From sequence record PV796108.1: a stretch of DNA of 64,000 nucleotides; one strand, 5' to 3'. Positions 21,609 to 38,732 of the stretch are shown piece by piece. The translations under genes were made by a program, and so were the position numbers. The notes beneath the pieces are model-generated. The model was not told the origin of the DNA, did no database searches, and saw only the letters and a list, made by a program, of their open reading frames with translations. Positions within the stretch are counted from its first letter, which is position 1; every line of letters starts with the position of its first letter.

Positions 21609-22910
21609 TCACCTCCATGAATTTGGTCCGACATATACATCATATCCTGGATACGAATCATACTCTCTTTCAAATAAGTCTACATGTATAAATCCATTAC
21701 CAGGCTTTACGTTTTGGAAGCCTAACATAGAAATAATATCTGCTAATCTATAAGTCTCTTCTTTGTTATATCCTGTTTGAATTTTTACCGCAAGACCTAT
21801 TCCATAAAATGTATTGGCTTTTGGTGTAAAAGATTGCAATATAGAAAGTTTATTCTTCTTTAACAGGCTCTTCGATTTAAATTCTTGATGGATTAAGTCC
21901 ATTGCTTTCAACATTAAAGGGTGTACAAGTAATGTACATCCTATGTGACCAGACTCATATCGAGAACTTGGAAGACGCACTAATCGTTTTTCGTTCAAGA
22001 AGTCTCTTCTATACAATGCATACATTTCTTTACGAGGATATTCTTTTGAGATTTCAATAGTTCTTGTATTGATCTTTGGAAGTGGAAGCATTAATGAAAC
22101 TTGTCCAACAGTAGGAATTACTTTTACTTCTCTTGCATCAGCAAAAAATTGTAGTGAAGCAAACTGAGCTGTTTTCTTTTCTTCTGGTTTAGCTGGTGTT
22201 GTAGCAGCTCCAGATGCCTTAGGAGGAGCGAAACGTCTTGCACATATATATCTAGCTCCATACCAGTTTGTATTCAAACTACGAAGTCCTAGACCTCCCC
22301 ATTCACCTTTACCAGATGCCATATCAATAAACTTATCTCCACCCATAGCGATAGCACAGTGAACTACGTTAAATGAACCGACGCCAGGAACGTTAACTCT
22401 ATGTCCACTACCATCTGTAGATTTAAAGAAGATACAATCCCCAGGGAGTAATTGTTCTCTAGGGATAATTAATTGACCTGCTTGGTTTGCAATCTGTTCT
22501 CCAGTATAACCACCTATATTCGGGCCACCTGCTAATTGAATTGCTTGTCTTGTTAATGTAGAACAGTCACCAGTATTCTTATTGATAATGTCACGGACAG
22601 CTTGAGAGTAAGGAGCATTCTTATGTTCATTCATAATCTTTTGAGCCATTGCCGCTATATTCTCTCCGTTGAATCCTGTTCCACCTTGGAATTGGAAGTT
22701 TCCATCAGGAGTAGCAGCAGGGACTTCAGTACTAACACCTGGGTCCCCACCATCTGTATACTCCGCTTCTTCCTCTTCCTTACGTTTCTTGTTTATTTCT
22801 TGAGAGTACTCTTCAATCCATTTAAGACGTTCTTCTGCATTAAGTTTCATCGCCTCTAACTTCTTGGAGTAATTATCTTCCCTTTGTGCGAACTTCTCAT
22901 TTCTAGCCAT
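21609..22910 (-). CDS. Tail-associated NlpC/P60 peptidase with a degenerate C-terminal peptidase M15-like domain
   Basis: GDCSTL...QLLPGDCIFF...VVHCAIAMG (~22230-22640); C-terminal QSFTPKANTFYGIGLAVKI...GFIHVD. Confidence 0.85.
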   Translation of the reverse strand: MARNEKFAQREDNYSKKLEAMKLNAEERLKWIEEYSQEINKKRKEEEEAEYTDGGDPGVSTEVPAATPDGNFQFQGGTGFNGENIAAMAQKIMNEHKNAPYSQAVRDIINKNTGDCSTLTRQAIQLAGGPNIGGYTGEQIANQAGQLIIPREQLLPGDCIFFKSTDGSGHRVNVPGVGSFNVVHCAIAMGGDKFIDMASGKGEWGGLGLRSLNTNWYGARYICARRFAPPKASGAATTPAKPEEKKTAQFASLQFFADAREVKVIPTVGQVSLMLPLPKINTRTIEISKEYPRKEMYALYRRDFLNEKRLVRLPSSRYESGHIGCTLLVHPLMLKAMDLIHQEFKSKSLLKKNKLSILQSFTPKANTFYGIGLAVKIQTGYNKEETYRLADIISMLGFQNVKPGNGFIHVDLFEREYDSYPGYDVYVGPNSWR

Positions 22911-22922
22911 CTAACTCACTCC

Positions 22923-24194
22923 TTACGGCCCACTTCCTGGTCCTTTATATGGTGGATAACCAGCGTAATCTCCCCAACTACCTGGAGGACCGATATCAAT
23001 ATGAACGAAACCACCACCAGGTTGCACAGCCCTAAATCCTAAATTGTAAGCCATGTCTGCAATCTGATATGCTCTTGCCCTACTTCGTCCTTCTACACCA
23101 ATATCAATTGCCATACCGCAACCATGGAAGTCATTATCGCCAGGACGATATGCAGAGTTCACTAGCATCTTCCCATTGGTTAATAGGTTTTGTGATTTCA
23201 TAGTGTTATAGAGTAACTCAACAAATGGAATAAACTCAGGAGCTTCCATCATTGTACATCCACCCAAGTTACTTACGAAACGACTTGCATCTAATCTTTG
23301 ATGACCAGTGTACCCTTTACGAGCAGCTAGTATCTTTGCTCTATAATCACTACGACTTTGAGCAGGTGGAGCATTTACTTTTCCATTACTAATGGTTGCA
23401 CCTTGTACACCGCCAGGGAAGTTAGTAGCGTAATTACCGCCACCGCCGCCACCTTGGGCTTTTTCTGGAAGACTATACATGAATGGGTCTGTGATTTTAT
23501 AACCAAGACCCTCCATGATTTCTTTAATACCTTTTGGATAAGAAGAACCATATCCACTATTACTATATCCAACGTAGAACCAAGCAATCTGATAAAGCTC
23601 TACTTTCTTCATATCCTCTGGGCCGAATCGGAATTTATGAGGAGTCTTTTGCCATGGCAACCAGTACGTATTACGTTTACCAATTAACTCTTCTACCCCA
23701 CATTCAATTTGATACTTTGTATCTTTTTGTAATCTACCAGTATCGAATCCATACTCAGATGCTTTAACCTGCATCAGACCATAGTAACCTGCATTCGAAC
23801 GAGTGGTTGGTTCCCCAGCAGACTCCTGAATCATAATAGCTTTAACGAAGACTGGATTGATTCCGCCTTTTTCTTTACATACCTGAACGATTAAGTCATT
23901 CCATTTATCTGTTCCAGCTACACGACCTTTCATACCCGTTTGACCATGGGCACTTTTCTCTGGTCCTTTCCAGTCTGCTACAGTTGGCATAGTTCCAGTG
24001 AAACTACCACCACCGCCTTCGGTAGTAGTAGCCTCTCCTCCTTCACCAGAACCTTTCTTCTTTTTCTTATTTGCTTCGATCTCTTTAGAGTATTCCTCAA
24101 TCCACTTCAGACGTTCCTCCGCATTGACCTTCATGGCCTCAAGCTTGGCGGAGTACTTATCTTCACGATTGGTTTGCTTATCTCCCCTTGCCAT
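22923..24194 (-). CDS. Tail-associated lytic transglycosylase (SLT) plus Zn peptidase M15
   Basis: VKAIMIQESAG...GLMQV (~23560-23910); NSAYRPGDNDFHGCGMAIDI...GFVHID (~22985-23260). Confidence 0.85.
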   Translation of the reverse strand: MARGDKQTNREDKYSAKLEAMKVNAEERLKWIEEYSKEIEANKKKKKGSGEGGEATTTEGGGGSFTGTMPTVADWKGPEKSAHGQTGMKGRVAGTDKWNDLIVQVCKEKGGINPVFVKAIMIQESAGEPTTRSNAGYYGLMQVKASEYGFDTGRLQKDTKYQIECGVEELIGKRNTYWLPWQKTPHKFRFGPEDMKKVELYQIAWFYVGYSNSGYGSSYPKGIKEIMEGLGYKITDPFMYSLPEKAQGGGGGGNYATNFPGGVQGATISNGKVNAPPAQSRSDYRAKILAARKGYTGHQRLDASRFVSNLGGCTMMEAPEFIPFVELLYNTMKSQNLLTNGKMLVNSAYRPGDNDFHGCGMAIDIGVEGRSRARAYQIADMAYNLGFRAVQPGGGFVHIDIGPPGSWGDYAGYPPYKGPGSGP

Positions 24195-24211: not shown

Positions 24212-27200
24212 TTACTCTTTTTTCTGACCATAATTATCAAGGTCTTCGTAGCTTGTTGTGAACTTACGGTCACTAGCTTCTGTGTCAGCCATGAAGTTCA
24301 TGAATCCACCGACTGCTGCAAAGAATCCGTCGCCTGAGCCATCGAATCCTAGACCTTGTAAGAAGTTATCCATTGAGCCTTGTTTCGTATCACCAACAAC
24401 CATACCTTTATGACCATTAATACCAGCTGTAAACTCTTTACCTTGATGCATTAATGGCATCATCAGTACAGCTTGGTTCGTAGTCTTACTTCGTCTCCAC
24501 TTCTCGAATAAGCTTTCAACTAACCATCCAGCAGTTAAACTGAATATCCATCCAAGTGGTGTCCCTTTCGAAGCAAAGGTTCCGACCCCTTTAATAAACT
24601 TAGAACTTGATTTCATATCTTTCATTGCACCAGGCAATTTAGATGCAGTTAGAAGTGAACGAGCCGCTAACTTTTTCGTTCCTTTCATAATCTTACCATC
24701 CTTACCAGGTACTCCTCCAGATTTTAACCATTCCTGCGCCTTTTTGGAAACATTATCTGCTGCATTTTTTACACGTTCCCAAGCCTGTGCCTCATTCTTA
24801 CCTTCCTTACCTTTTGCTTTATAGTAAGAATCAATAGCCTTTTTCAGTTCATCTGTTTCAGGAGTTTCAGGAAGTGTACTTACAAGGTTCTTCATACTCT
24901 TCTCTACTATCCATCCACCAGCTGCTTTACCTTTGGTCATTAATGTTCGACCTGTTGCACTATTAGCGAACTTACGAGTTGCCGCATTACCAGCACGCAT
25001 TCCCATAACAGTTGCTCCAGCTAACATCCCGATTGATGCCCACCAGTTTGAATGAGCTAACATTGCTTTGTCATCAATAACAACAACTGCATCAGGAGTT
25101 ACACTTGAAATGAAACCAGTCTCATGAGAGAAGTGATGAACAACAGCTTCAACTCCGATGTTACCGTTCATATCAGAAACTGAATCTGACATGTAAATCA
25201 TATCGTGTGGTTTCAATGTAGGTGTTCCAAGGATTGTGATACGTCCTTTATACATATCTTTCATGTAATCACGAACAGTACTTGCAGAGTAGTAAAGAGC
25301 TTGCTTCTCTGTAGTAAACTTATCCCAACCTGGAATTGTACGAGAGATTAATGGAAGGTCAACAACGGCTGTACGTTGCATTGAGAAGTCGATATCGTAG
25401 TCTGCATACACTGGAGGTGTTGGTTTGCCGCCGTAGTTACCAACAACAATTGTGTACATACCATCAGAAGATGCTTTGATTTGGTTAGAGATAATATCCA
25501 TGCCATCATCAATATAATGAAGTTGACAATATGGACGTCTATGCTCTGTATCAAGCGTACGATCCCATGACTTCGTTTTCTCGTTATAAGCATAGGTACT
25601 ATCATAACGATATGCCATATTCCAATATGGTTTTCCGAAGAACAATGTAGAGCGTGTTTCGAATGGATGAACCGCAGCAATATAGTCAGGGAAGCAATAA
25701 GAAATGTTTGTAGCTACATCCCAGATTGTTTGATTATATAGAGGCATCAAGATGTTGTCCTCGTCACCGCCTTGGAATTTAAGAATGAATCCATCCCACT
25801 TCATAGGAATACGAGTACCATCTTCATAAATCCATTGGCTAAATGTTTGAAGCCCGTTTGCAGAGTAAATGTTTTGAGCAGCCTCTCCATAGTTTTCATT
25901 GAAGAACTTGAAGTTAGCATCTGGTGTTCTATCGCCTGGACGACCAAAGTGAGCCACCCCTAATGGATTGTCACGGAAGAATCTATTCTCACTGGCTACG
26001 TTAATTACGTCTTTTGCCCATGCACCTTTAGATGTTAATAACTTACAGATAATGTCTCGTGGTTCTTGAGCATTAAATAGTTTCGCTGTCTTATCGTCAG
26101 GGTCACCAGAGATTACGCTTGTTAATTCTAGTCCGTCACCTTGAGCAACGATAGTGATAATGTCGTTCGTATCCATCTCTGTAATCTTACCGTTGAATAC
26201 AGTTGGTAATCTTCGTACAGATGAGCCATAACCCATTCGCAAGTGAATACGAGCACCAACTTCTAACATCATACTGTTCAATAAATCTGAACGAGCATCT
26301 AGTACTGCATCACTTGGATTGTCTAGTACTAAGTTATCCCAGAAGCTATATGCAAAGCTATCATACATTTCACTTGTTGGTCGTGCTGTTAAGTTACTGT
26401 ATACGTTTGTCATCGAGATAACAGCTGTATCTGCAACTTGTTTTCTACTTCTATGAACATCAATAGATTGGATTGCGTTGAATCCGTAGAAGTTATCCCA
26501 TAGACGATAAGAACCCATCCAACGTCCTTCATCAATAATGAAGAATTGGAACGTAGGGAAAGCACGACATAAGCGACCTCTCATATCATATGACAACATA
26601 TTGTGAGACATTTGAGAGAATGCCTCTTCAGGAGATTGCTGGAATAGTAGACGATTGTATTCCTCATCTTTGATGTCTTCTACCTTTTGTTGGTTTTCAT
26701 AGTTCTTCGATTCTTGAGATTTACCATCTCCGAAAACTTGGTCCCATAAAGAGCCATCTCCACCAAATGTTTTACTCCATCCTAAAGCAAGAAGGTCAGT
26801 TGCCCATTTACCAATTAGCATGTTTGTATTACCGCCAGTCGGAATCTTAACTTGGTCTAGGTAACCTTTTAACTTTCCGTCCTTATGCATCTTCATGTAT
26901 GATTCGTAAATCTTCTTTACTTCACTAGATGATTTCTTCTTCATCTCACTCAGCAATGCCTTTGCCTTTTCCTTGCCGATAACATCCTCAATGATTTTAG
27001 AATCCTCTAAGTCTTTGATTAAAGCATCCTTATCACTTGTTGCTACGTTGACACTGTGTGAAGATTTACCATCAACTAGCTTCATGATGTCAGGGTCTAC
27101 AACTTGTCGTGGAGAACGGTAACGGTTCTTATCTCCGTTATATAAAGACTTCCACACACTCATGATAGAAGGGAATGCACCTTCTTTGATGCTGTCTTTT

Positions 27201-30200
27201 TTCAGCTCACCAATATAGAAAGCAGATAACATGTAATCCCAAGCACGGTATTCAAACTCTTTCTCTTTTGAATCTCTAGCTTTTACATAGAATTTATAGA
27301 TATCATCTACGATTACCTTCAACTGATATTTCCAATCCCATAGGAATCGTTGTGCATCATCTACACTACTTGTAAAGTTTGGAATGTCTACCTTACCGAT
27401 ACCACCGAATGTACCGTTCACATAAGGCTTGCTCATAGAATCGAAGCCATTCCATTTACTTTGGTGATGGAAGAATGCTTTTAAATAGTTGGCAATACGA
27501 GCACGAGTGGTTGGCATAAACTCTTTGTAGTACATACCATTTGTTTTATCTTGTCCAAGTAAAGCAACTAAGTTATCAGTAGGCTTCTTACCTTCACGAT
27601 ATTGTGTATACAGTTTCAAGTGGTCTTCTGGTTCAGCATACGTAAGTTTTGTATGTCCACCTTCAGCTTTGTTTTTGTCATTGTATACGTTGTTGTTTTT
27701 CACCCAACGTCCATCAATTAAAGAGTAAAGTTCTTTATAGAACTCGATTGGTTTTGGAACAACATTCTGTCTCCACTTTGTAAAATCAGCTTCAGTTGAA
27801 CCATAGCCCCATGTCTTCCACTTATCTAATGGAGGAGGAGTATCTATATTCTTTTTCTCTTTTAACCATGTAGCAACTTCAGCATTTGGCTTACCAGTAC
27901 CTTTTGCACCACCAGTAGAGTCTGTTGCATTCTCCGCAGCCTTTTCAGAGTTTGCACCTTGATTATCCTCAGCCCAGTTAAAGACATAAGGAACATAAGG
28001 AGTCTTCTTCTCAAGCGCTTCAATTACATGCATGTTCTCTTTATCTACATCCATTGGGTCTGTAGAAGTAATGTTGGATGACATGTGAACACCAGAAGAG
28101 TCACTGAACTTCATCTCTTTACGTTGTTCTAATTGCTTCTTAACTTCTCCACGGAATGTCCATTTTGTAGAAGCATAGAAGTCAGGGTCAACGTAAACAC
28201 CACCTGGTTTGTTTTTGTACTCTTTAATACCAGCTCCAGTTTTCTCAATGACATCATTCAGCTCTTTGTAAGTTGGTAATTCTAAGTCAGGGTATACTTC
28301 CATTTGGTCCATCTTGTATTCAATGATTGCATCCTGTAGTTTGTAATCTACTGTAGATGAATGTAATTGATCTCGGTCATTTCCATCGAATGCACTCATG
28401 CCTTTTAGTTCTTCTTGGCGACGTTGTGTTTTGTTGAATGCTACTAGAACCATTTCACCTTGAAATCGACCTGGGAATCCTGGCACCGTATTAATATTCA
28501 ATGTTTCAATCATGACACTCTTCACACCGAATAGTTTCATTAATTGATTCTCTATTCCTAAGAACCCAGAAGAAATACCTACACGATAATGACGAGCGAA
28601 CTCATCAATCTTATCTACTAAAGTACGTAGTTTCATTACACCATCTTCTGTTAATTCAAGGTCTAGTTTTACGGCAACATCTTGAGAACCAAGGAACTGC
28701 ATCGTAGGTGATTCACCTGTACGAGTTTGAGCAGAACTGAAAATGTTTTCGTACATAACTTGCATAGAAGTAACCAACATATCCTTTTCAGGAATTGTAT
28801 AGTCAATCATAGATAGTTTTGATTCCGTTACATATACAATGTCACTTAACTTGTTATAACGGTCAATCTCAGTCATTGCCATTTGTTCTGCACGACGACC
28901 TCTTTCAACGATACTCTTCAATGCACCTAAAGATGTTTCTGTTACATAGAAGTAACCAATAGCATCTTTCTCGGACTTCGGTTTTACCCAAAGGTTTTTA
29001 TGCTTCTTCAGTTCCTCACCATTCGGGATAGACCATAAGAAGATTTTAAATGTATCTTTCTTACGGAAGTATCCAGGAAGCTCTGAACCTTCTTCTGCAT
29101 CTACTGGTAATTTACCACGCATGATGTCATGCACTTCACTATCATGTGGAGCAAAGAATTCCGTATCATCAAATACAGCTCTAGCACTTCTATTGTTGTA
29201 CATATCTTGGAACACTTGATGACCTTCTACTAAATCATCAGGGTCTTTAATATCACCATTCTTTTTATGGCGTTGATACTTATCGTACTGTTCAAGAACA
29301 AGTGATGCTTTTTTACCATCAGCAATAACTTTACCTAGTTCACTCTTCTTCGCATCAATCTCCATTCTCATTACATTGATTGGCTTCATTTCACGAAGAG
29401 CAATGATTGCTTCTGCTCGTTGTTCTAATTCAGCTTCATCTGCATGAGAGAAAGAAATCTTATTTGTTAATTGACCAGCGATAGGTTCTAGGAATGTATG
29501 AGCATCATTAGCTGGTTTAGATAAACTACGTTGGTAGTACCATCTCATTAATGGATAGTTAATCGCATCATGCAAACTAACTTCTTGAGGCATGTAAGCT
29601 TCAGAGTTGAATTTCGCTAATGTTAAGTTAGCCATAATAGAATGAGGGAATCCTGGCACTGTCTCTACTGATAAGTTCATTAATGCCACATCATGAATAT
29701 CTAAGATAGTATTAATGTATGCATTATCAATAGGAAGGAAAGGCATCTTCTGGAACTGAGCAATCAATTGGCGTAAACCATCCATTGTGTACTCCATACC
29801 TTCTGGTGTTTTCCAAGGCGTACCATTAATCGCTTCTAAGTCATGGAAATATAATTGAAGATTAATAGATGTACTTGAGAAACCAGTCTTCGTTAAAATA
29901 CTTCCTTTTGTACGAAGTGTCTTAACACGTTCTGTATGAGAAGTTCTGTTCACTTGGATTCCTAATGGAGGAACGGTAAGTAATACATCACCAATACGAA
30001 CACGATGTTGGTTTTGTAGGTCTCCCATCTTTTCTAATCTATCATCTAGTGGTTCTAAGAAGTCTAGTGTATTGTCATACACTTCATCATATTTGATTTT
30101 AACTTCTGACAAGTCCGATTTCTCTTCGTTGTTCTTACCACTTTCTTTAAAGTAGTCGTCTAGCTTCTCGCCAACTGTTCCGCTATCAGGCATATCCTTT

Positions 30201-31171
30201 AATAGTCCAAGGTCTTTATACCATTTCATTACATCGAAACGAATATAGCCTTCGTCATTTACGAACTTCTCATATGGCATACCAAGAGGAGCAGGTGCAT
30301 ATAATGCAGAAGGTTTAGCAAGTAAGCTTTTATTCATATTGATTGCGCTAGGTATTTTGTCACCTTTAAGTACTTCTGATTTATTTACATGTGTTTTGTA
30401 AACAACAGCAACATAACGACCATATACATCTTTACGTGGTTCATGGTTTTCGATTCTATCTACATCGACTACGACAGCCCCAGAACCACTTAACATGTTG
30501 TTCATGTAGTCTCTTGCTTCTTCACCGATCTTGAATGCTTGTTCTTTTGTTACTTTATAGCGAGACATGTACCCAGCATTTCGAGTTGTACCAGATGCTT
30601 CGCCGTGGTCTTCTGTCTCAGGTGCTTGTACACCTACATAACGAATATTAATGCGTTCGCCTTTTTTAACATGTATCCCAATCCATTTACCCGTATCATA
30701 AACAACACCAGAGATTGTATCACCATCTTTTACTTTTACATCTTCTAATACAATGATACCTTCTGATACTGGAGTTTCTTCTGGCGGAGCTGCTAAAGCA
30801 CGAGCCATTAATCTAGGAGCAAATGCAGGTTCTGCTTTCTTATCTTCCCCTATTCTTCCTTGCTCATGAAATGGAGAGTTGGATTCAACAGGTAGCTTTC
30901 TAACTACGTGTGCATGTACATCTATATTCGAAACCTTACCACCTAGTTTTCTTGCGAATCCGTGGCTTCCTTCTGTTTTATTAAATAGAACGGAGATAGG
31001 ATATACTTTATTTTTTGCGGCTACTGTTGCTAAGTATTCGGACAATCTATTTCCAACAGAAACTTCGTTATATCTAAAACGAACTCTTTCTCCATCTACA
31101 TCCAGAGTAAGAAGCCAGAATGACTCTGGCTTCTCTTTCTGAACAGATAGGAGTCTCATTTCATACAACAT
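24212..31171 (-). CDS. ~2319-aa baseplate hub. Domains: N-terminal SNase/thermonuclease, two tube-like domains, degenerate SLT, gp27/gpD-like hub, hydrophobic C-terminus
   Basis: Start moved to ATG 31171 (AAAGGAGG RBS). DGDT at 30716-30727, IRYVGVQAPE and DVYGRYVAVVY give the SNase. IQSIDVHRSRKQVADTAVISMTN...RIHLRMGYG...VFNGKITE gives the hub. Confidence 0.8.
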   Translation of the reverse strand: MLYEMRLLSVQKEKPESFWLLTLDVDGERVRFRYNEVSVGNRLSEYLATVAAKNKVYPISVLFNKTEGSHGFARKLGGKVSNIDVHAHVVRKLPVESNSPFHEQGRIGEDKKAEPAFAPRLMARALAAPPEETPVSEGIIVLEDVKVKDGDTISGVVYDTGKWIGIHVKKGERINIRYVGVQAPETEDHGEASGTTRNAGYMSRYKVTKEQAFKIGEEARDYMNNMLSGSGAVVVDVDRIENHEPRKDVYGRYVAVVYKTHVNKSEVLKGDKIPSAINMNKSLLAKPSALYAPAPLGMPYEKFVNDEGYIRFDVMKWYKDLGLLKDMPDSGTVGEKLDDYFKESGKNNEEKSDLSEVKIKYDEVYDNTLDFLEPLDDRLEKMGDLQNQHRVRIGDVLLTVPPLGIQVNRTSHTERVKTLRTKGSILTKTGFSSTSINLQLYFHDLEAINGTPWKTPEGMEYTMDGLRQLIAQFQKMPFLPIDNAYINTILDIHDVALMNLSVETVPGFPHSIMANLTLAKFNSEAYMPQEVSLHDAINYPLMRWYYQRSLSKPANDAHTFLEPIAGQLTNKISFSHADEAELEQRAEAIIALREMKPINVMRMEIDAKKSELGKVIADGKKASLVLEQYDKYQRHKKNGDIKDPDDLVEGHQVFQDMYNNRSARAVFDDTEFFAPHDSEVHDIMRGKLPVDAEEGSELPGYFRKKDTFKIFLWSIPNGEELKKHKNLWVKPKSEKDAIGYFYVTETSLGALKSIVERGRRAEQMAMTEIDRYNKLSDIVYVTESKLSMIDYTIPEKDMLVTSMQVMYENIFSSAQTRTGESPTMQFLGSQDVAVKLDLELTEDGVMKLRTLVDKIDEFARHYRVGISSGFLGIENQLMKLFGVKSVMIETLNINTVPGFPGRFQGEMVLVAFNKTQRRQEELKGMSAFDGNDRDQLHSSTVDYKLQDAIIEYKMDQMEVYPDLELPTYKELNDVIEKTGAGIKEYKNKPGGVYVDPDFYASTKWTFRGEVKKQLEQRKEMKFSDSSGVHMSSNITSTDPMDVDKENMHVIEALEKKTPYVPYVFNWAEDNQGANSEKAAENATDSTGGAKGTGKPNAEVATWLKEKKNIDTPPPLDKWKTWGYGSTEADFTKWRQNVVPKPIEFYKELYSLIDGRWVKNNNVYNDKNKAEGGHTKLTYAEPEDHLKLYTQYREGKKPTDNLVALLGQDKTNGMYYKEFMPTTRARIANYLKAFFHHQSKWNGFDSMSKPYVNGTFGGIGKVDIPNFTSSVDDAQRFLWDWKYQLKVIVDDIYKFYVKARDSKEKEFEYRAWDYMLSAFYIGELKKDSIKEGAFPSIMSVWKSLYNGDKNRYRSPRQVVDPDIMKLVDGKSSHSVNVATSDKDALIKDLEDSKIIEDVIGKEKAKALLSEMKKKSSSEVKKIYESYMKMHKDGKLKGYLDQVKIPTGGNTNMLIGKWATDLLALGWSKTFGGDGSLWDQVFGDGKSQESKNYENQQKVEDIKDEEYNRLLFQQSPEEAFSQMSHNMLSYDMRGRLCRAFPTFQFFIIDEGRWMGSYRLWDNFYGFNAIQSIDVHRSRKQVADTAVISMTNVYSNLTARPTSEMYDSFAYSFWDNLVLDNPSDAVLDARSDLLNSMMLEVGARIHLRMGYGSSVRRLPTVFNGKITEMDTNDIITIVAQGDGLELTSVISGDPDDKTAKLFNAQEPRDIICKLLTSKGAWAKDVINVASENRFFRDNPLGVAHFGRPGDRTPDANFKFFNENYGEAAQNIYSANGLQTFSQWIYEDGTRIPMKWDGFILKFQGGDEDNILMPLYNQTIWDVATNISYCFPDYIAAVHPFETRSTLFFGKPYWNMAYRYDSTYAYNEKTKSWDRTLDTEHRRPYCQLHYIDDGMDIISNQIKASSDGMYTIVVGNYGGKPTPPVYADYDIDFSMQRTAVVDLPLISRTIPGWDKFTTEKQALYYSASTVRDYMKDMYKGRITILGTPTLKPHDMIYMSDSVSDMNGNIGVEAVVHHFSHETGFISSVTPDAVVVIDDKAMLAHSNWWASIGMLAGATVMGMRAGNAATRKFANSATGRTLMTKGKAAGGWIVEKSMKNLVSTLPETPETDELKKAIDSYYKAKGKEGKNEAQAWERVKNAADNVSKKAQEWLKSGGVPGKDGKIMKGTKKLAARSLLTASKLPGAMKDMKSSSKFIKGVGTFASKGTPLGWIFSLTAGWLVESLFEKWRRSKTTNQAVLMMPLMHQGKEFTAGINGHKGMVVGDTKQGSMDNFLQGLGFDGSGDGFFAAVGGFMNFMADTEASDRKFTTSYEDLDNYGQKKE

Positions 31172-31184
31172 ATGAAAACCTCCT

Positions 31185-34100
31185 TTAATATGTGAACCCT
31201 TTACCCATGACGTTTGCAAACTGTGTCTGCATCCATTCATTGTCTAACTTTTGGGTGTTATCATTTACATTCATGTTCATGTTAAGTTGAGCGCTCGTTT
31301 GATTGGACAACTCTTGGTGAACAAGTTTAGAAATATCTTGTTGAGACATTCCTTTTGCATCCTTTGCTCTAATCGAGATGTTGATGTTTTCATTCGACAT
31401 TACACGAGCAGTTGGGCCAGAAGATACTTGGACAGGAGGTGGCGGTGGTGGCGCCATTTCAGTCTGCTCTTGGAATGCTTCTGGTGTTGGACCACTTCTC
31501 ATTAAAGCTGAAGCTGCCCACATAGCACCAAATCCAATTGCTCCTCCTATCATACCTGGTCCCATCTTATGTGCTAGACCAGACATTTTTTCACCTACGG
31601 CTTCTGTTGCTCGAACAATACCTTTGTCTGCACCAATCATTTCTGTAAGAGTATTCTTACTTAGATGCGGTGTTTCAGTTATCGTATCAGCGAGAGAATC
31701 TTTTATTGCTCTGTCTCTAAACGAGAATCGCTCGGAGATGAGGTTTTCAAAGTTCTGCACGCCTTCATCATATATCTTTTTAAATTGAGGATTGTTTGCA
31801 GCGATGTTGTCTAAGTGAGGAGTTGGAACTGATTCGTATTTACCACCAGCTACAATGTTAGAAACAATTTCTGTATCCTTCGTACCACCAGATTGCATAC
31901 CCTTCAGATGAGGATTCTCAGTGAATGAATTTCCAGATAATGAATACAGGTCTTGTAATTGGTCTAAGTGTCTATCAAGACCGTAGTGGTTCATACTTTC
32001 GCCTGGATTACTTGTTTTGAAGATACCAAGTATATCATTGGCTTTTCGAATCTTCTCTACACCAACAGAGTCAGGTCGGATAACACCTTCCTTTAACATC
32101 TCAATCGCTTGGTAATGAGTTTGCATACGGCGTTCGACTTCAGTCATAACTGCATCTGCACCATGATGCTCCATTACTTTAGCAGCGTATTGGCTTTCAT
32201 CACTCGTTAATGATTTGCCCCAGCTCTTAACAATCTCTTCCGTTAAAGCACCGACACTAATCTTTTTAGAAGAAATAGAGTCCTGTGAAATCTTACTACT
32301 GAACTCTTCTAAAACATTCATAGCTTGGTATGCTTCGTCTTGAGACATCAAGCCTTTCTTAGCAAGAGCTTCATAAGTTGGGTTCGTTAGAGTTTGCATA
32401 CGTTGACGTAAGTTATCGAGTACCCCGATATCAGCTTTACCAGTACGAGCTAGTAAGCTTTCCATCTCATTGAGTCTAGTTGTTTTTGGACCCCAACCAG
32501 CTAACTCTCCAAGGTCTTGCGTCTTCTGAATGTCTCTTTGGATTTGCTCACCAACTGTAAGCTTTTCTGAGTTGTAATGCTTTAACTCATCTCCTGCCAT
32601 TTCAACAGCAGCTTGATTATAAAGTGGAACACTTCCTTGTTGAACCTCAGCCATTTCACCATGAATCGCACGAATGTCATCAATAGTATGATTCTTACTT
32701 GCTTTATAGTGGTTGAATACGGCGTTACCATTATCACCATCATGATCGGCTTTGAATACTTTTGCAGTACCAGCGCCAACATACATAACGTTTGATTCGA
32801 TTCTATCATCCACCAGATAACGAAGAACTCCATTGGTCTGTTTATTGATAGTCGGATAACGGTTCGTAAATCCATATAAACCATTTGTTTTTGCAATTTC
32901 AAGTGCTTCTTCACCCATACGTTCAGATTTAAACTGATTCGCTAAAGATTCGAGACGTTTTTTCTCTTGTCCTTTTGCTTTACCAGCTTGAGTCATTCGT
33001 TCATTGTACTCTGTAAGAATAGATTCATGACGCTTCGGAGCTAATGATTGAACGATGTCGCCTTCTGCACCTGCAATCATACGTTGCATTTGTTTCGGAC
33101 CGATTAATGCATCCCCTTCAGCCAATCCTTTCTCATGCATGTTAACCCCTTCAATGTGGAAACGACCAGACATATCCATCTTCGCAGAGTATTTATCTAG
33201 AAGTGTTCCTCCATGAGAACCAGTTACCATGTAATTCAGGTATGACTTGTATGCATCCACTGCTTGTTCAACAGCTTCTTTGTTCTCAATTGTAGGAGCA
33301 GCTTGATATGCTTTAATGTTTCTCCAGATACCAAGAGAACGTTTGTCTACTTCATTTGCCATCTCCAGTGCTTCTGGGCCAGTACCGATTTGCATCGTAC
33401 CAGGAGACATTAATCGAACGTACTTATCTTTAAACTGATGCTCACTATTACTTGGCATTTCTAGTAAGAATGTACCACCGTTTTTCTTCATAAGACTTCC
33501 GACAGTCTCATCAACACCTTCACCAAGTCCTTCGATTTGTAACTGCAAGCTTCTTGGGTCTGCAAGTGTCATTGCATAATTACCAAGTTTACCTTTCGTC
33601 ATCTCAGGGTCAGTAGCAACATTGAATTGTGGGTCACGGAATGCATGTTGAGAAATCTCTAGGTGACCATCTTTCATAACAGCTGTATGTGTACCATCTG
33701 GGTCTAAGTCAGTCATGATGTTTCCGCCTGTACGAATAACAATGTCACCATCTTGTACAACGCCTTGTTTTTGAAGAGTTGTGTTTTGGTGGTCATTGAT
33801 TGCTCGTAAGATACCAGACGTTTCTTCAGCTAGTGTCATTTCATTACTGCTGTTTTGAAGAGCAGAACGTGAGGAGATTTGTTGGCGAACGAACTTACCA
33901 ATAGTGTGGTCTTTACGATTTAAGATTTGGTCTGTACGATTGACAATGGCTTCTTGCTCTTTATATGTCCAACGTACTAAGCCAGACTTACCATCAGTAG
34001 ATACACCCATTTGGTCTTGCCATTTATGAAGGTCAGCAACTCGAAGTGTTAAGTTAACATTCTTTTCCTGACGATTAATTGGAGCAACATAATTGATAAC

Positions 34101-37100
34101 GCCAGCTTTAGCCGCAAGCTCTTCCAACATTTGAGATGATTGTTTTACGAAATCATACTCTTGTTGTAACCCATATACAGGCCCAGCGATTCGACCATGC
34201 TCTGAATTTAATACCAGCTTACCGACTGTTAAGTTGCTTCCTTGTACAGGCTCAAGTCTCATACCAATATCTGCATCTGGTATTTGGAAGATACGTTGTG
34301 TCATATCTTTAATATCTAATACGTATTTTTTAACGGCTTCATTCTTGAAGTCCATGTCAGAGTTTGTAATTAATCGGTTGGCTTCATCTACAGCTAATCG
34401 GACTTGACCTTCAATCTCCGTACCATGCATACCTTTATTGATATCACTTACAGTAACGATTGCTTTTGAATTTCCTACACCAAGTGCTTCAAAGATATCT
34501 CTATCGAAGAAGTTTGTTGTAATACGATGGTTGGCATCCGTTAAGAACTTACGTCCATTCTCTGTTTTCTCAATCATTTGAGTTTGCAGTTTACGAGTCT
34601 CTGGGTCATAACCTACAACATGGAATCCATCTCCCCATGCTTTTTCAGCTTGATAGTTTGTATTTTGACCAACACTTACTTGACCAATTGTTAATTTTCC
34701 ATGGTCAGCTTTACCTGGGTTATTCACACGACCACCAAGAATTGTTTCCAATTCAGTAGCGTTTTTCATTACATCCCCTTCAAGTCTCCATCCACCACTA
34801 TCAGTTCGAACAGAACGGAATCCATCTCTCTCCAAATCATTACCTTCAGCTTGTCTAAAGAAGTTTTCAATATCTTTGTGTAAGCTGTATCCACGTTGCA
34901 GAGTAAAGTTCTTCTCACGCTTCGTATCAAATACACTTTGTAATGACTTATCAATGATAGACATACCCTCAAATGTAGTCAGGTTCTTTTCAAATCCTTG
35001 ACCATATTTTCGAACTAGGTCTGCATATCCATCAGGATTGCTTTTTCTAAATGCATCCATTCGATCTTTAATGTCCATGTCTGTTAATTCAACAGCTTGA
35101 ACATTTAATCCTGTTAATTCTTTTTGTTTAACAACAGAACCATCAGGCATACGAATAGGAGCGCTTAAAGCTTCAGATGCAGTTGTTGTCGCAGAAGTTT
35201 GAATCATACGTTCAATCTCAACACTTGTATAGCCTTGTGCTTGTAATCGACTACGAATCTCTCTTTCTTCTAGTGGAATGTAGTTACGAGTTTTATTCAT
35301 TTGCTCACGGGCTAGGATATTGTAATGCCCAAATGCTTGATAAGCTTGCGATGTTTCTCTTGTACCGTAAATACCATTCAGTACTTGTTCACCACTCACG
35401 TTACCAGCATTTAAATACATGTTCTTTTCTCTAGATGCAAACTCTTGAATCGTACTATGGAAAGCACGTTGCTCTCTCATTCCTAAGTTCTCGAAGAATG
35501 AAGTATATGAACCAGAAGCCTTGTCTTTAATCTGTTGGTATTTGTTTTTTACGCCTAGTTCTTTTTCGAAACCATAACGTTGGTCATACCATGAATACCA
35601 TTCTTCAGCCCATCCACTTACATCTATCTTACTTCGAGCAGCACGTTGAGCTACCTGAGAACGCTTAGAGTCGTGCTTAGTAAGTTCTTTTGCATTTGTG
35701 TATGGATTATTATGTGAGAACTTTTCTGTCGCTTCACGAGCTTGTCTACGTAGTCTAGAGTGAGCTTCCTGTTCGTTACCTTTACGGATTAACTCTTTTG
35801 TAGAACCAGCACGACGAACTGCACCATCTACTAATTGTTCCAATGGAGTACCAAGAATGTCTTTACCATTCATACGCATTGCTTTTAGATAACCTGTTTT
35901 AGTAGAACCAGGCATCTGAACGTTCATGTTTTCATCCAGTAATGGAATTGGAACAGAAGCAACTTTTGCGTGTTCAATGATTTGGTTTGGCTGAAGACCC
36001 ATTACTTCTTTCATAACAGTTTCCTGCATAACAGCAAGCATGTATGTCTTCTTATGTCCATCATAGATTAATTGAGTAGCCATTCCCTCACCAGAATAAG
36101 AATGGATTAATTGTTTCACTACATCTTCAGCTTTCATCGTTTGAACGCCACGAGCAGTGTTACCACCACTGATTTGCATTAAACCATTTAAAGCTTCATC
36201 ATGTACTTGCAATGCCTTTTGGAATTTAGCGTCACTTAAATCTACAGCTTTACCTTGAGTCTTATGAGATGCTCTTCCGCTATCAATCCCTCGTCCGATG
36301 ATTTCATCTAAGATAGCAGGGTTTTTGTAAGCTTCAACTAAAGGCTTACGGATAGAACTTACATCTTTAATATCTAAGTTATGGTTTGCATAAGATGAGT
36401 TATGAGTATACTCTGCTCTCATCATACGAGCCATACTTTCAATAATCATGTACGGGCTTTCTCCGTGTTGTAGTTCAGAAACCTGACGCATTAGTTGAGA
36501 TTTCTCAGATGATGTTAACCCTGAAGCTCCTGGCCTACGAATATGATGCACAACATCTTGCAAACGTTTCTTTACAAGACCGATATCTACGCCACCATTC
36601 TTACTGATGTTCTCTTTAATATCTAATCCTTTTGTGATATAAGAACGGATATTACGAGCTGCTGTCGCATCAGTAGAAAGATCAATACGATGAGTTGTAT
36701 CACCAGGCAATTGTAATTCTAGGAATCCTTTACCGTTTGGCATTCTAATTCTTGACTCACCGCTACCATATCTCTCATCTAACTCTTGAGAAATTTTACG
36801 TAGAGCTACGTTCTGACTGAAAGGAGTAAATCCATTTACAGCTGGCATAGTAGAATCTAAACGTTGCATAGCAGTTTGCCATACTTTCTTCTCTTGCGTT
36901 AAACGTTTCTCCATTACAAGAAGGTCACGGTATTGAGAGTTTGGTAATCCAGTAGGAGTTCCGCCAACAGTACGTTGCACATTTGGATGATTCTGTACAT
37001 AGTCAGCAATATCTACTTTGCGGATTTCACCACGTTTAACTTTCTCTCTCCCTTCGTTTAATGCATCAAGAGCAGCGTACATACGCTCAAGCATCCAACG

Positions 37101-38732
37101 CCCACCACCAGATTCAGTAGTAGAGAACATCTTATCGTAAGTACGTCTTGCACGGTCTAATCCATATGCAGTTCTATTTCCAGAGTTAGGGTTTGCTAAA
37201 TGAGGAACTTCTTCTGAAGGTTTAAATACTTGATGGAATACACTTTGAAGGTCTGTCTCGCTATCTCTAGCAATGAAGTGAAATAAGTCTGTTTCTAAGT
37301 TACGAAGCAAGATACCACTTTGTTTATTCTCAGAGTTCTTTAATTTACCGCTGAATGTTTTTACAACCTCATACTCAGACTCTTTAGAGATTGGATTCAC
37401 ATTCCCTTTGTAAGCAGGGACCAACTGTTTCTTTTCTGGGTCCCAACGGAACACACCATCATTCGCTCCGCTTTCATATCCTGGCAACCCTGTCATAGAG
37501 AATAACTTATCTCCAGCTTTAATGGAGTTACTATTCCAAGTACCATTCATACGAGTACCAGCATCACTATTTACAATACCTTCTACATTTAATTTATCTA
37601 AGAATACTTTATTAGCTACGTCTACAGTTAAATCCGTATCTTGTAAAGCCATGTGAGTTGCTTGTGCGACTTCACCAGTCATTCCATAGAAGTTTGCTAG
37701 CGTTTGGTTCTTTAAGCCATGCTTAGAACTTAGGTCAGCGAATAAAGAGTTTGCAATAGATAATGTATCGAATGAGTCAGCCTTTTGAATATCAGAAGCT
37801 AAACGATTTAAAGCCATTCTAGTCTTTCTATCTTTCTTAGGTATGCTAGGAACTAACTGGTCTTTAATATAATCACGCATGAAGGGGATATCATATGTGT
37901 TAATATTTTGCCCACCTAGTTTTAATTCTTTTCCATTACGTAATGTATTCAAGAATTCTCTAGCTACTACATGCGGTTCTGTACCATGCTTTACAACATT
38001 CTCGAATCCACGTTTCGCCGCTTTGATTTGGTCATGTGTAAATAAAGTACCTTTCATAGCTTTTTGATCTTTGTTCTGTTTTAAGATGGTAGTCATGTCA
38101 CCATCTTTACGGAAGTATCCTTGTCCGAATGCATCATCTGCTCCGTATAGGATTAAGTCATTCACGGTACGTCTTTCATCATCAGACAAGTTAATGCCTG
38201 TGATATGGATTCCTTTTAGTTTTTCAAAGATATCCATTACATGCTTTTGTTCTTTCTCACCTGGCTTTACTAATAGAGAAAGAGCCTTATCTGTTTTACT
38301 AAATTGAAGTTTACCTGCGGCATCTCTTTCTACCTTTGTTTGACGGAAACCAAACTCTAGAGGTGAGTACCATTCTCCGCCATGAGTACCAATATTCTCA
38401 ATATCGAAGAACGTGAAGATATCTCCAGCCTTCATATTTTGAATCGTTTGGATTGACTTCTGAGCATGGGATTTCGTGCTTGTACTTGGGATATGGATAG
38501 ACTTAAACATATTCATTTGAGAATCAGCAGAGTTTGTCAATATCTTACCGTTGTAAGTAGCCGCTTTGAATAACTCATCAGCACCTGTTGTTCTTGGTTT
38601 CTTTTCTCGTTGAGACATTTGAGCAACAATGTATGATGGGTCAGGGTTAGTATTTTGTTTGATATAAGTATCATGAAGGGGGTCGTATTTAAACTGACCC
38701 CCATTTTTAATTCCCCCTTTATTTTCTTCCAT
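31185..38732 (-). CDS. 2515-aa putative virion single-chain two-barrel RNA polymerase with an N-terminal DEDDh 3'-5' exonuclease and a tape-measure-like C-terminus
   Basis: Exonuclease: FFDIE (D110/E112), GQNINTYD281, H360MALQD365. RNAP motifs in canonical order: TFEG(1255)MSII, GRK1395...R1403, LLDKYSAKMDMSGR, NR1958YPT, AD1996HD1998GD2000. Confidence 0.82.
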   Translation of the reverse strand: MEENKGGIKNGGQFKYDPLHDTYIKQNTNPDPSYIVAQMSQREKKPRTTGADELFKAATYNGKILTNSADSQMNMFKSIHIPSTSTKSHAQKSIQTIQNMKAGDIFTFFDIENIGTHGGEWYSPLEFGFRQTKVERDAAGKLQFSKTDKALSLLVKPGEKEQKHVMDIFEKLKGIHITGINLSDDERRTVNDLILYGADDAFGQGYFRKDGDMTTILKQNKDQKAMKGTLFTHDQIKAAKRGFENVVKHGTEPHVVAREFLNTLRNGKELKLGGQNINTYDIPFMRDYIKDQLVPSIPKKDRKTRMALNRLASDIQKADSFDTLSIANSLFADLSSKHGLKNQTLANFYGMTGEVAQATHMALQDTDLTVDVANKVFLDKLNVEGIVNSDAGTRMNGTWNSNSIKAGDKLFSMTGLPGYESGANDGVFRWDPEKKQLVPAYKGNVNPISKESEYEVVKTFSGKLKNSENKQSGILLRNLETDLFHFIARDSETDLQSVFHQVFKPSEEVPHLANPNSGNRTAYGLDRARRTYDKMFSTTESGGGRWMLERMYAALDALNEGREKVKRGEIRKVDIADYVQNHPNVQRTVGGTPTGLPNSQYRDLLVMEKRLTQEKKVWQTAMQRLDSTMPAVNGFTPFSQNVALRKISQELDERYGSGESRIRMPNGKGFLELQLPGDTTHRIDLSTDATAARNIRSYITKGLDIKENISKNGGVDIGLVKKRLQDVVHHIRRPGASGLTSSEKSQLMRQVSELQHGESPYMIIESMARMMRAEYTHNSSYANHNLDIKDVSSIRKPLVEAYKNPAILDEIIGRGIDSGRASHKTQGKAVDLSDAKFQKALQVHDEALNGLMQISGGNTARGVQTMKAEDVVKQLIHSYSGEGMATQLIYDGHKKTYMLAVMQETVMKEVMGLQPNQIIEHAKVASVPIPLLDENMNVQMPGSTKTGYLKAMRMNGKDILGTPLEQLVDGAVRRAGSTKELIRKGNEQEAHSRLRRQAREATEKFSHNNPYTNAKELTKHDSKRSQVAQRAARSKIDVSGWAEEWYSWYDQRYGFEKELGVKNKYQQIKDKASGSYTSFFENLGMREQRAFHSTIQEFASREKNMYLNAGNVSGEQVLNGIYGTRETSQAYQAFGHYNILAREQMNKTRNYIPLEEREIRSRLQAQGYTSVEIERMIQTSATTTASEALSAPIRMPDGSVVKQKELTGLNVQAVELTDMDIKDRMDAFRKSNPDGYADLVRKYGQGFEKNLTTFEGMSIIDKSLQSVFDTKREKNFTLQRGYSLHKDIENFFRQAEGNDLERDGFRSVRTDSGGWRLEGDVMKNATELETILGGRVNNPGKADHGKLTIGQVSVGQNTNYQAEKAWGDGFHVVGYDPETRKLQTQMIEKTENGRKFLTDANHRITTNFFDRDIFEALGVGNSKAIVTVSDINKGMHGTEIEGQVRLAVDEANRLITNSDMDFKNEAVKKYVLDIKDMTQRIFQIPDADIGMRLEPVQGSNLTVGKLVLNSEHGRIAGPVYGLQQEYDFVKQSSQMLEELAAKAGVINYVAPINRQEKNVNLTLRVADLHKWQDQMGVSTDGKSGLVRWTYKEQEAIVNRTDQILNRKDHTIGKFVRQQISSRSALQNSSNEMTLAEETSGILRAINDHQNTTLQKQGVVQDGDIVIRTGGNIMTDLDPDGTHTAVMKDGHLEISQHAFRDPQFNVATDPEMTKGKLGNYAMTLADPRSLQLQIEGLGEGVDETVGSLMKKNGGTFLLEMPSNSEHQFKDKYVRLMSPGTMQIGTGPEALEMANEVDKRSLGIWRNIKAYQAAPTIENKEAVEQAVDAYKSYLNYMVTGSHGGTLLDKYSAKMDMSGRFHIEGVNMHEKGLAEGDALIGPKQMQRMIAGAEGDIVQSLAPKRHESILTEYNERMTQAGKAKGQEKKRLESLANQFKSERMGEEALEIAKTNGLYGFTNRYPTINKQTNGVLRYLVDDRIESNVMYVGAGTAKVFKADHDGDNGNAVFNHYKASKNHTIDDIRAIHGEMAEVQQGSVPLYNQAAVEMAGDELKHYNSEKLTVGEQIQRDIQKTQDLGELAGWGPKTTRLNEMESLLARTGKADIGVLDNLRQRMQTLTNPTYEALAKKGLMSQDEAYQAMNVLEEFSSKISQDSISSKKISVGALTEEIVKSWGKSLTSDESQYAAKVMEHHGADAVMTEVERRMQTHYQAIEMLKEGVIRPDSVGVEKIRKANDILGIFKTSNPGESMNHYGLDRHLDQLQDLYSLSGNSFTENPHLKGMQSGGTKDTEIVSNIVAGGKYESVPTPHLDNIAANNPQFKKIYDEGVQNFENLISERFSFRDRAIKDSLADTITETPHLSKNTLTEMIGADKGIVRATEAVGEKMSGLAHKMGPGMIGGAIGFGAMWAASALMRSGPTPEAFQEQTEMAPPPPPPVQVSSGPTARVMSNENINISIRAKDAKGMSQQDISKLVHQELSNQTSAQLNMNMNVNDNTQKLDNEWMQTQFANVMGKGFTY

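What the first reader, a model, noticed from the sequence alone, without database searches (positions are those of the whole stretch)
30310..30745. Thermonuclease (SNase) at the N-terminus of the baseplate hub
Seen: VKDGDT (30716-30727), IRYVGVQAPE and KDVYGRYVAVVY...NMNKSLL. Known: these match staphylococcal nuclease D19/D21, R35, E43 and R87; the D40 Ca2+ ligand is Gln here. Hubs usually carry peptidoglycan hydrolases, not nucleases. Inference: it either clears extracellular DNA in biofilm ahead of the tail tip or is delivered into the cell.
Basis: partly seen in the sequence, partly recalled or inferred. Interest (0 to 1): 0.7.

Follow-up and report, generated by a model that had tools for sequence, protein, structure and literature searches.

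The report
Nuclease domain on phage baseplate hub
The 2319-residue baseplate-hub protein of the Bacillus cereus jumbo phage Edson carries a staphylococcal-nuclease-type domain with an intact catalytic core near its N-terminus; a 2007 paper noted the same feature in a related Bacillus element and nobody has explained it since.

Summary
Observation confirmed. The window is Bacillus phage Edson (100% identity). The gene at 24212-31171 (- strand, intact, 2319 aa) encodes an SNase-fold domain at aa ~135-298. Evidence:
- Pfam SNase scores above its curated cut-off.
- A family profile hits staphylococcal nuclease in the PDB at E=4e-8.
- The AlphaFold model has pLDDT 92, and all 50 listed Foldseek PDB hits are SNase.
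- The equivalents of SNase D19, D21, T22, R35, E43 and R87 are invariant in 19/19 relatives at ~33% identity.
- The D40 position is Gln here and D/N/Q across the family.
- dN/dS against phage WH1 is 0.036.

The hub assignment holds through collinear homology to 0305phi8-36 gp147, a published T4 gp27/P2 gpD homologue, and through gene order. The SNase module sits where gp147 carries a lytic transglycosylase. In Edson the wall hydrolases are separate genes just downstream.

The feature is not new. Hardies et al. (Virol J 2007; 4:97) described an N-terminal SNase domain in the BtI1 hub homologue and called its use obscure. Function remains untested. My best inference is a Ca2+-dependent nuclease carried on the virion that acts outside the cytoplasm. 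Interest is moderate. It is a new member of a known kind.

The parts
24212..31171 (-). Baseplate hub gene (Edson GAKEdson_0910, 2319 aa). Intact: no stops or frameshifts.
   Evidence: ORF. 100% identical to PV796108.1. Collinear homology to 0305phi8-36 gp147 'baseplate hub'. Orthologue WH1 gp094 is annotated 'virion structural protein'.
31179..31184 (-). Shine-Dalgarno AGGAGG, 7 nt upstream of the ATG at 31171. It fixes the true start; the longer ORF running to 31240 overlaps the upstream gene.
30842..31171 (-). N-terminal domain of unknown function (aa 1-~110), followed by an Ala/Pro-rich linker (aa ~111-134).
   Evidence: Translation. No family hit. A comparable extra N-terminal domain is described for the BwK1/BtI1 homologues (PMC2147016).
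30278..30769 (-). SNase (thermonuclease)-fold domain, aa ~135-298. A ~20-aa helical insert follows the E43-equivalent, and the C-terminal third is divergent.
   Evidence: Pfam; PDB profile search; AF2 pLDDT 91.8; Foldseek PDB and BFVD; dN/dS 0.036.
30716..30727 (-). DGDT motif, D149-T152, equivalent to SNase D19 G20 D21 T22 (D21 is a Ca2+ ligand).
   Evidence: 19/19 invariant
30617..30643 (-). R177...Q182 A183 P184 E185, equivalent to SNase R35...D40 T41 P42 E43. Gln replaces the D40 Ca2+ ligand.
   Evidence: R and E are 19/19 invariant. The D40 position is D7/N5/Q7.
30416..30424 (-). Y250 G251 R252, equivalent to SNase Y85 G86 R87.
   Evidence: R is 19/19 and Y is 17/19.
29492..30034 (-). Conserved block A (aa ~380-560), function unknown, shared with gp147.
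   Evidence: Conservation profile; tblastn to gp147.
28172..28774 (-). Conserved block B (aa ~800-1000), shared with gp147. Contains a weak DUF6046 match.
24998..26626 (-). Hub core (aa ~1516-2058), the most conserved part, homologous to the gp27/gpD-like part of gp147.
   Evidence: tblastn E=6e-52 to gp147; phrog_20474 at 1e-216; weak PDB hit 9qgm_8A at E=0.031; Pfam YQBQ-like in 2/12 members; HHsearch assignment of gp147 in PMC2147016.
31185..38732 (-). Upstream neighbour, 2515 aa. By position and size it is the counterpart of the 0305phi8-36 gp146 tape measure (2537 aa).
   Evidence: No family hit. No detectable sequence similarity to gp146.
22923..24194 (-). Downstream tail-lysin candidate with SLT transglycosylase and an M15-like peptidase. 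Its SLT part is homologous to the N-terminal module of gp147.
   Evidence: Pfam; tblastn E=7e-17 to gp147 aa 3-135.
21609..22910 (-). Downstream NlpC/P60 protein, homologous to the C-terminal NlpC/P60 module of gp147.
   Evidence: Pfam; tblastn 1e-8.

Best explanation
The domain is a genuine SNase-family phosphodiesterase and is probably catalytically competent. It is built into the trimeric baseplate hub and so is carried on every virion. It occupies the N-terminal 'payload' slot that holds a lytic transglycosylase in the homologous hub of phage 0305phi8-36. The most likely action is outside the cytoplasm: cutting free or surface-bound nucleic acid (biofilm or lysate DNA and RNA) around the host envelope before or during tail contraction. 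Dependence on millimolar Ca2+ would keep it inactive in the low-Ca2+ cytoplasm where virions assemble next to phage DNA, and would switch it on outside the cell. Shown: the fold, the conserved catalytic residues, purifying selection, the hub context and the slot equivalence. Inferred: activity, Ca2+ dependence, substrate, exposure on the virion and site of action.
For: Fold and family. Catalytic constellation: the D19/D21/T22/R35/E43/R87 equivalents are invariant in 19/19 sequences at ~33% identity. The D40 position is always D, N or Q and never a residue without a side-chain oxygen. dN/dS for the domain, Edson against WH1, is 0.036, close to the hub core at 0.027. All but one of the hits in 1.84 billion representative proteins are ~1900-2500-aa hub-type proteins or fragments of them, with the domain at aa ~130-320 in most, so the domain is long resident in this hub lineage. 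It is also present in the Moorella phage MTATph1 hub. Slot equivalence: the gp147 N-terminus is an SLT module that is homologous to the separate Edson gene 22923-24194 (PMC2147016). An SNase was acquired separately in the Acinetobacter phage ME3 hub, next to an M23 peptidase, and a 'baseplate hub protein' of an uncultured phage also appears among the fold hits. SNase-family enzymes being Ca2+-dependent and extracellular is established knowledge, not something tested here.
Against: No activity, metal-binding or virion-location data exist for any member. The canonical D40 Ca2+ ligand is Gln and T41 is Ala. Only the first ~60% of the Pfam model aligns. The C-terminal third, which in SNase holds the Tyr113/Tyr115 nucleotide contacts, cannot be aligned by sequence. 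A helical insert sits beside the active site. Global TM-scores to SNase are only 0.44-0.57. Virion presence rests on database annotation of WH1 gp094 alone. A non-specific nuclease next to the DNA exit channel must somehow be kept off the phage's own genome.
Confidence: 0.45

Rival explanations
1. Delivered effector. The hub, like an 'evolved' VgrG spike of a type VI secretion system, carries the nuclease through the envelope. It then acts inside the host on chromosomal, plasmid or RNA targets, or on nucleotide signals.
For: The hub core is gp27/gpD/VgrG-like. One family member carries a T6SS VgrG3-like C-terminal domain at E=3.8e-49, so this scaffold does exchange effector modules with secretion systems.
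Against: SNase-type chemistry needs far more Ca2+ than the cytoplasm offers (established knowledge). The enzyme would be non-specific and would meet the incoming phage genome too. The same slot in gp147 holds a wall-acting enzyme. No hydrophobic or translocation segment was found.
Confidence: 0.15
2. Non-catalytic module. The OB-fold is kept as a structural adaptor or as a binder of polyanions (DNA, teichoic acids) that helps adsorption, without hydrolysis.
For: SNase-like domains that bind but do not cut exist elsewhere, for example the SN domains of Tudor-SN proteins (established knowledge). D40 is replaced by Q/N in 12/19 members. The C-terminal third is divergent.
Against: All four residues that matter most for catalysis are invariant in 19/19 sequences while their surroundings drift to ~33% identity. 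Binding alone would not require E43 and both arginines together with D21.
Confidence: 0.15
3. Retargeted phosphodiesterase. The SNase chemistry is turned on phosphodiester-linked wall polymers of Gram-positive hosts, such as teichoic acids or the linkage units of secondary wall polysaccharides, as part of the wall attack.
For: The slot is otherwise used by a wall hydrolase. Every member of this N-terminal subfamily with a named host infects Firmicutes: Bacillus or Moorella. The region that would contact the nucleotide base is not conserved with SNase, and an invariant Asn sits in a new insert near the active site.
Against: No SNase-fold enzyme is known to me with such a substrate. The Gram-negative Acinetobacter phage ME3 also puts an SNase on its hub, though from a different SNase lineage. 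Most family members come from metagenomes with unknown hosts.
Confidence: 0.1

Closest known systems
Hub protein of the BtI1 phage-like element of Bacillus thuringiensis israelensis (RBTH_07687), described by Hardies, Thomas and Serwer, Virol J 2007; 4:97 (PMC2147016)
   Same: A homologue of 0305phi8-36 gp147 with an N-terminal staphylococcal-nuclease-related domain, a further unidentified domain upstream of it, and two lysin-type genes directly downstream. Edson has the same layout.
   Different: I did not fetch or compare the BtI1 sequence, so identity to Edson is not measured. BtI1 is a chromosomal string of phage-like genes, whereas Edson is an isolated phage.
Bacillus phage 0305phi8-36 gp147 baseplate hub
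   Same: Collinear homology over blocks A and B and the hub core. The position after the tape measure and before the gpV/gpW/gpJ-like genes is the same.
   Different: gp147 has no Pfam SNase. It carries an SLT at the N-terminus and NlpC/P60 plus M23 at the C-terminus, and these modules are separate genes in Edson.
Staphylococcus aureus nuclease (thermonuclease, SNase; e.g. PDB 1stn, 1ey0)
   Same: The OB-fold core and the D19/D21/T22, R35, E43 and Y85-G86-R87 equivalents.
   Different: About 20-25% identity. D40 is Gln and T41 is Ala. There is an extra helix after E43, and the C-terminal third is divergent. It is a domain of a 2319-aa structural protein, not a secreted 149-aa enzyme.
Acinetobacter phage vB_AbaM_ME3 hub protein ME3_37
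   Same: A giant gp147-family hub carrying an SNase domain (Pfam E=4.7e-14).
   Different: The domain is mid-protein (aa 1126-1241), next to an M23 peptidase. It is canonical in length and only remotely related to Edson's (BLASTP found nothing; hhalign gave 75%). This points to a separate acquisition.
T4 gp27-gp5 hub with tail lysozyme; evolved VgrG spikes of type VI secretion
   Same: The concept is shared: a gp27-like hub that carries an enzyme to the target envelope.
   Different: Those payloads are wall hydrolases or toxins placed C-terminal to the hub or spike. Here the payload is a nuclease-type domain about 1200 residues N-terminal to the hub core.

Membership tests
SNase / thermonuclease superfamily (Pfam PF00565) | Match to the family model above its curated threshold | tested here: met
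   26.5 bits against a cut-off of 21, E=9e-6, but only model positions 1-60 of 107. 13 of 16 full-length relatives also match.
SNase / thermonuclease superfamily (Pfam PF00565) | OB-fold barrel plus helices of SNase | tested here: met
   AF2 pLDDT 91.8. All 50 listed Foldseek PDB hits are SNase at prob 1.0, TM 0.44/0.57, rmsd 2.8 A over 121 columns. An independent BFVD model of the WH1 orthologue agrees at TMq 0.93.
SNase / thermonuclease superfamily (Pfam PF00565) | Catalytic residues R35, E43 and R87 | tested here: met
   R177, E185 and R252, mapped through the HMMER alignment to SNase chains. Invariant in 19/19.
SNase / thermonuclease superfamily (Pfam PF00565) | Ca2+ ligands D21 and D40 (T41 contributes through its backbone) | tested here: inconclusive
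   The D21 equivalent is present and invariant. The D40 equivalent is Gln here and D7/N5/Q7 across the family. Whether Gln still ligates Ca2+ cannot be decided from sequence.
SNase / thermonuclease superfamily (Pfam PF00565) | Nucleotide-binding C-terminal segment (Tyr113/Tyr115 region) | tested here: inconclusive
   Neither the Pfam nor the PDB profile alignment extends there. The model folds confidently, but I had no access to its coordinates.
SNase / thermonuclease superfamily (Pfam PF00565) | Ca2+-dependent cleavage of DNA/RNA | not testable with these tools
   No experimental data were found for any hub-borne member.
Baseplate hub (T4 gp27 / P2 gpD / VgrG-N family) | Homology to gp27/gpD hub domains | tested here: inconclusive
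   Direct tests were weak: no Pfam hub family hit, YQBQ-like in 2/12 members at E=0.008, and PDB 9qgm_8A (Photorhabdus, identity of the chain not established) at E=0.031. The indirect link is strong: E=6e-52 to gp147, which HHsearch linked to gp27 domains 1 and 3 in PMC2147016.
Baseplate hub (T4 gp27 / P2 gpD / VgrG-N family) | Gene position between the tape measure and the baseplate wedge genes of a contractile tail | tested here: met
   The order is sheath, tube, chaperones, 2025-aa gene, 2515-aa gene, this gene, two lysins, small genes, baseplate J. 0305phi8-36, KLEB27-3 and MTATph1 share it.
Baseplate hub (T4 gp27 / P2 gpD / VgrG-N family) | Presence in the virion | not testable with these tools
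   Only the database label 'virion structural protein' on WH1 gp094. No paper on WH1 or KLEB27-3 is in the library.
0305phi8-36 gp147 / BtI1 hub family | Collinear similarity over the non-enzymatic body of the protein | tested here: met
   Edson aa 387-590, 820-1001, 1521-1913 and 1967-2085 match gp147 in the same order.

The most novel reading that the evidence does not exclude
The hub SNase subfamily, so far seen only in phages of Firmicutes where hosts are known, has been retargeted from nucleic acids to the phosphodiester-linked anionic polymers of the Gram-positive wall. It would then be a new kind of virion-borne wall-depolymerising enzyme sitting in the slot that relatives fill with a transglycosylase. 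Its distinguishing features are a new helical insert, an invariant Asn beside the active site, N/Q at the D40 position, and a C-terminal third that cannot be aligned to SNase.
Probability: 0.1. Interest if true: 0.8.

Novelty: new member of a known kind. Interest (0 to 1): 0.4.

Why it matters
Phage tail tips are known to carry peptidoglycan and capsule hydrolases. A nuclease-type enzyme fixed to the hub is a recurring payload that nobody has studied. It appears in this Bacillus/Moorella lineage, separately in Acinetobacter phage ME3, and in uncultured phages. If it cuts extracellular nucleic acid, that would add a matrix component to the list of barriers that virions digest for themselves. 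It would also show how a dangerous non-specific nuclease can be assembled safely beside phage DNA, through Ca2+ gating. For annotation, it turns a 'hypothetical protein' in Edson into a hub with a defined enzymatic module.

Tried and rejected
- phmmer of the single domain against the PDB found nothing. A profile was needed.
- Single-sequence AF2 failed with pLDDT 36 and cost one of the two structure jobs, so the hub core could not be folded.
I used only window and search-derived proteins instead.
- The whole-protein profile against the PDB gave only weak SNase hits and no hub structures.
- The hub-core profile gave only a marginal Photorhabdus hit and no Pfam hub family. The word-based protein search returned fragments without Pfam hub labels.
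- The genome-contig scan found no relatives. The domain alignment was too variable to scan with.
- P0018, which looked like a stand-alone 152-aa SNase, is not on record. It lacks a start Met and ends abruptly in the alignment, so I read it as a fragment of a hub and not as a free-standing donor gene.
- An apparent loss of DGDT in the L004/5/8/9 lineage came from where I cut the piece. The motif is present upstream.
- A hydropathy scan found no membrane-type segment, so I dropped the idea of a C-terminal membrane anchor.
- Literature searches for virion- or hub-borne thermonucleases found only the 2007 paper.

- All residue mapping comes from the tool alignment.
- I also glanced at a tool-printed consensus line once. 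I then replaced that with column counts.
Full report
**Identity of the window and gene**

The 7-kb region is 100% identical to Bacillus phage Edson (PV796108.1, 233.8 kb, host B. cereus). It is 91% identical to phage vB_BceM_WH1.

The finding lies in one intact - strand ORF. The longest ORF starts at 31240, but that start overlaps the upstream gene. The real start is ATG 31171, which sits 7 nt after a perfect AGGAGG and just after the upstream stop. The GenBank CDS uses the same start. The product has 2319 aa and is labelled 'hypothetical' in Edson and 'virion structural protein' in WH1.

**The observation**

DGDT lies at exactly 30716-30727.

- Pfam SNase scores 26.5 bits against a cut-off of 21.
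- NCBIfam's calcium-activated nuclease EcnA and a PHROG endonuclease family give consistent weaker hits.
- The single sequence finds nothing in the PDB.
- A profile of 12 domain sequences finds staphylococcal nuclease at E=4.4e-8.

The alignment printed maps the residues as follows:

| Edson residue(s) | SNase equivalent |
|---|---|
| D149 G150 D151 T152 | D19 G20 D21 T22 |
| R177 | R35 |
| Q182 | D40 |
| A183 | T41 |
| E185 | E43 |
| Y250 G251 R252 | Y85 G86 R87 |

**Fold**

A single-sequence prediction failed. With 18 homologues the AF2 model reached pLDDT 91.8 and pTM 0.85.

Foldseek against the PDB listed 50 hits, all staphylococcal nuclease, at probability 1.0. TM-scores were 0.44-0.57, and the best local superpositions gave 2.8-3.5 A over 121 columns. 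Against predicted viral structures, the top hit is a fragment of the WH1 orthologue at TMq 0.93. It is followed by free-standing thermonuclease-like proteins of phages and giant viruses, and by a fragment of a 'baseplate hub protein' from an uncultured phage.

The domain differs from SNase in two ways. It has an extra helix after the E43 equivalent. Its C-terminal third cannot be aligned by sequence.

**Conservation**

A full scan of 1.84 billion representative proteins found 18 relatives of the domain. Thirteen are full-length proteins of 2320-2498 aa with the domain at about aa 130-325. Four others are a 1910-aa protein with the domain at aa 39-198, an 899-aa and a 152-aa sequence that I read as fragments, and P0015, which is described under 'noticed in passing'. 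Fifteen IMG/VR loci encode relatives of the whole protein, and 12 of them carry the domain.

Across 19 sequences at about 33% identity:
- The equivalents of D19, D21, T22, R35, E43 and R87 are invariant.
- Y85 is kept in 17 of 19.
- The D40 position is D in 7, N in 5 and Q in 7, and never a residue without a side-chain oxygen.

An apparent exception in one lineage came from where I cut the sequence piece.

Between Edson and WH1 the domain has dN/dS 0.036. The hub core has 0.027 and the whole gene 0.047. This pattern fits an enzyme kept under selection and does not fit a decaying or purely structural relic.

**The carrier protein**

The most conserved part (aa ~1516-2058) matches ORF147 of Bacillus phage 0305phi8-36, annotated as the baseplate hub, at E=6e-52. 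It also matches the hub of Acinetobacter phage ME3. The similarity to gp147 is collinear over four blocks.

Hardies, Thomas and Serwer assigned gp147 to the T4 gp27/P2 gpD hub family by HMM-HMM comparison (PMC2147016). My own direct tests of that link were weak:
- A hub-core profile hit one Photorhabdus chain in the PDB at E=0.031.
- Two of 12 members touched Pfam YQBQ-like.

Gene order agrees with a hub. The sequence is sheath, tube, chaperones, a 2025-aa gp145 homologue, a 2515-aa gene in the tape-measure position, this gene, two lysin-type genes, small baseplate genes and baseplate J.

**The slot**

gp147 has no SNase. It carries NlpC/P60 and M23 domains at its C-terminus and, according to the paper, a transglycosylase at its N-terminus.

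In Edson the SLT protein encoded at 22923-24194 is homologous to the first ~135 residues of gp147 (E=7e-17). The NlpC/P60 protein at 21609-22910 matches the C-terminal module of gp147. The SNase module therefore sits where a relative carries an enzyme that must act on the wall, and the wall hydrolases have become separate neighbours.

Other hubs also carry an SNase:
- The Moorella phage MTATph1 hub has the N-terminal SNase (hhalign 96%, E=4e-9).
- The ME3 hub has a canonical SNase in mid-protein beside an M23 peptidase. It is only remotely related to Edson's, which suggests a second, separate acquisition.

One family member carries a VgrG3-like C-terminal domain and two carry LysM. This shows that the scaffold swaps payloads.

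**Prior knowledge**

[quoted passage not shown] It also notes that a further unidentified domain lies upstream, that two lysin-type genes lie just downstream, and that the use of the nuclease domain is obscure.

That is the architecture found in Edson. The finding is a new, well-supported member of a described arrangement. I found no later work on it.

**Mechanism**

Shown:
- An SNase fold with an intact and conserved catalytic core.
- Purifying selection on the domain.
- Location in a hub protein.
- Occupation of a payload slot that a relative uses for a wall enzyme.

Inferred:
- The domain is active.
- It needs Ca2+. This is established for SNase enzymes, but here a Gln replaces one ligand.
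- It acts outside the cytoplasm on nucleic acid around the cell.
- The Ca2+ requirement protects phage DNA during assembly.

I put 0.45 on this reading. The rivals are delivery into the cell (0.15), a non-catalytic binding or structural role (0.15), and retargeting to phosphodiester-linked wall polymers (0.10). The last is the most novel reading that the data leave open. Every host known for this N-terminal subfamily is a Firmicute, and the part of SNase that contacts the base is the part that has diverged.

**Verdict**

Noticed in passing
window 21609-24194 (- strand): Two lysin-type genes directly downstream of the hub (SLT plus M15-like, and NlpC/P60) are homologous to the N- and C-terminal modules fused into 0305phi8-36 gp147. 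This is a clear case of domain fission or fusion between a hub and its neighbouring genes.
   Followed up: partly
L020 (Acinetobacter phage ME3) 7330-14319, protein aa 1126-1401: The ME3 hub protein has a full-length canonical SNase domain immediately followed by a peptidase M23. It is only remotely related to the Edson domain and sits at a different place in the protein, so it is probably an independent acquisition.
   Followed up: partly
L003 (Bacillus phage KLEB27-3) 5003-12156: The homologue of the Edson 2025-aa gene (window 38745-44822) is annotated there as two CDS with one small extra CDS between them, that is, one interruption. I did not examine what kind of interruption it is.
   Followed up: no
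L021 (Moorella phage MTATph1) 961-8317: A transposase CDS lies inside the block of large structural genes upstream of the hub (one insertion). The region that corresponds to the Edson tape-measure-sized gene is annotated as several shorter CDS.
   Followed up: no
protein P0015 (1316 aa): This protein shows six separate matches to the first ~60 residues of the domain (the beta-barrel half carrying DGDT and R35-E43). It looks like a repeat array of half-SNase units.
   Followed up: no
alignment A1 members: One full-length family member carries a T6SS VgrG3-like C-terminal domain (E=3.8e-49) and two carry LysM. I did not determine which members, or where in the proteins.
   Followed up: no
window 31185-38732 and 38745-44822 (- strand): Two further giant genes (2515 and 2025 aa) have no family hit in Pfam, PHROGs or NCBIfam. 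The 2025-aa one is homologous to 0305phi8-36 gp145. The 2515-aa one has the size and position of the gp146 tape measure but no detectable similarity to it.
   Followed up: partly
window 28559-28660 (hub aa 871-904): A weak DUF6046 match recurs in 10 of 16 family members, always below the Pfam cut-off. Its meaning is unknown.
   Followed up: no
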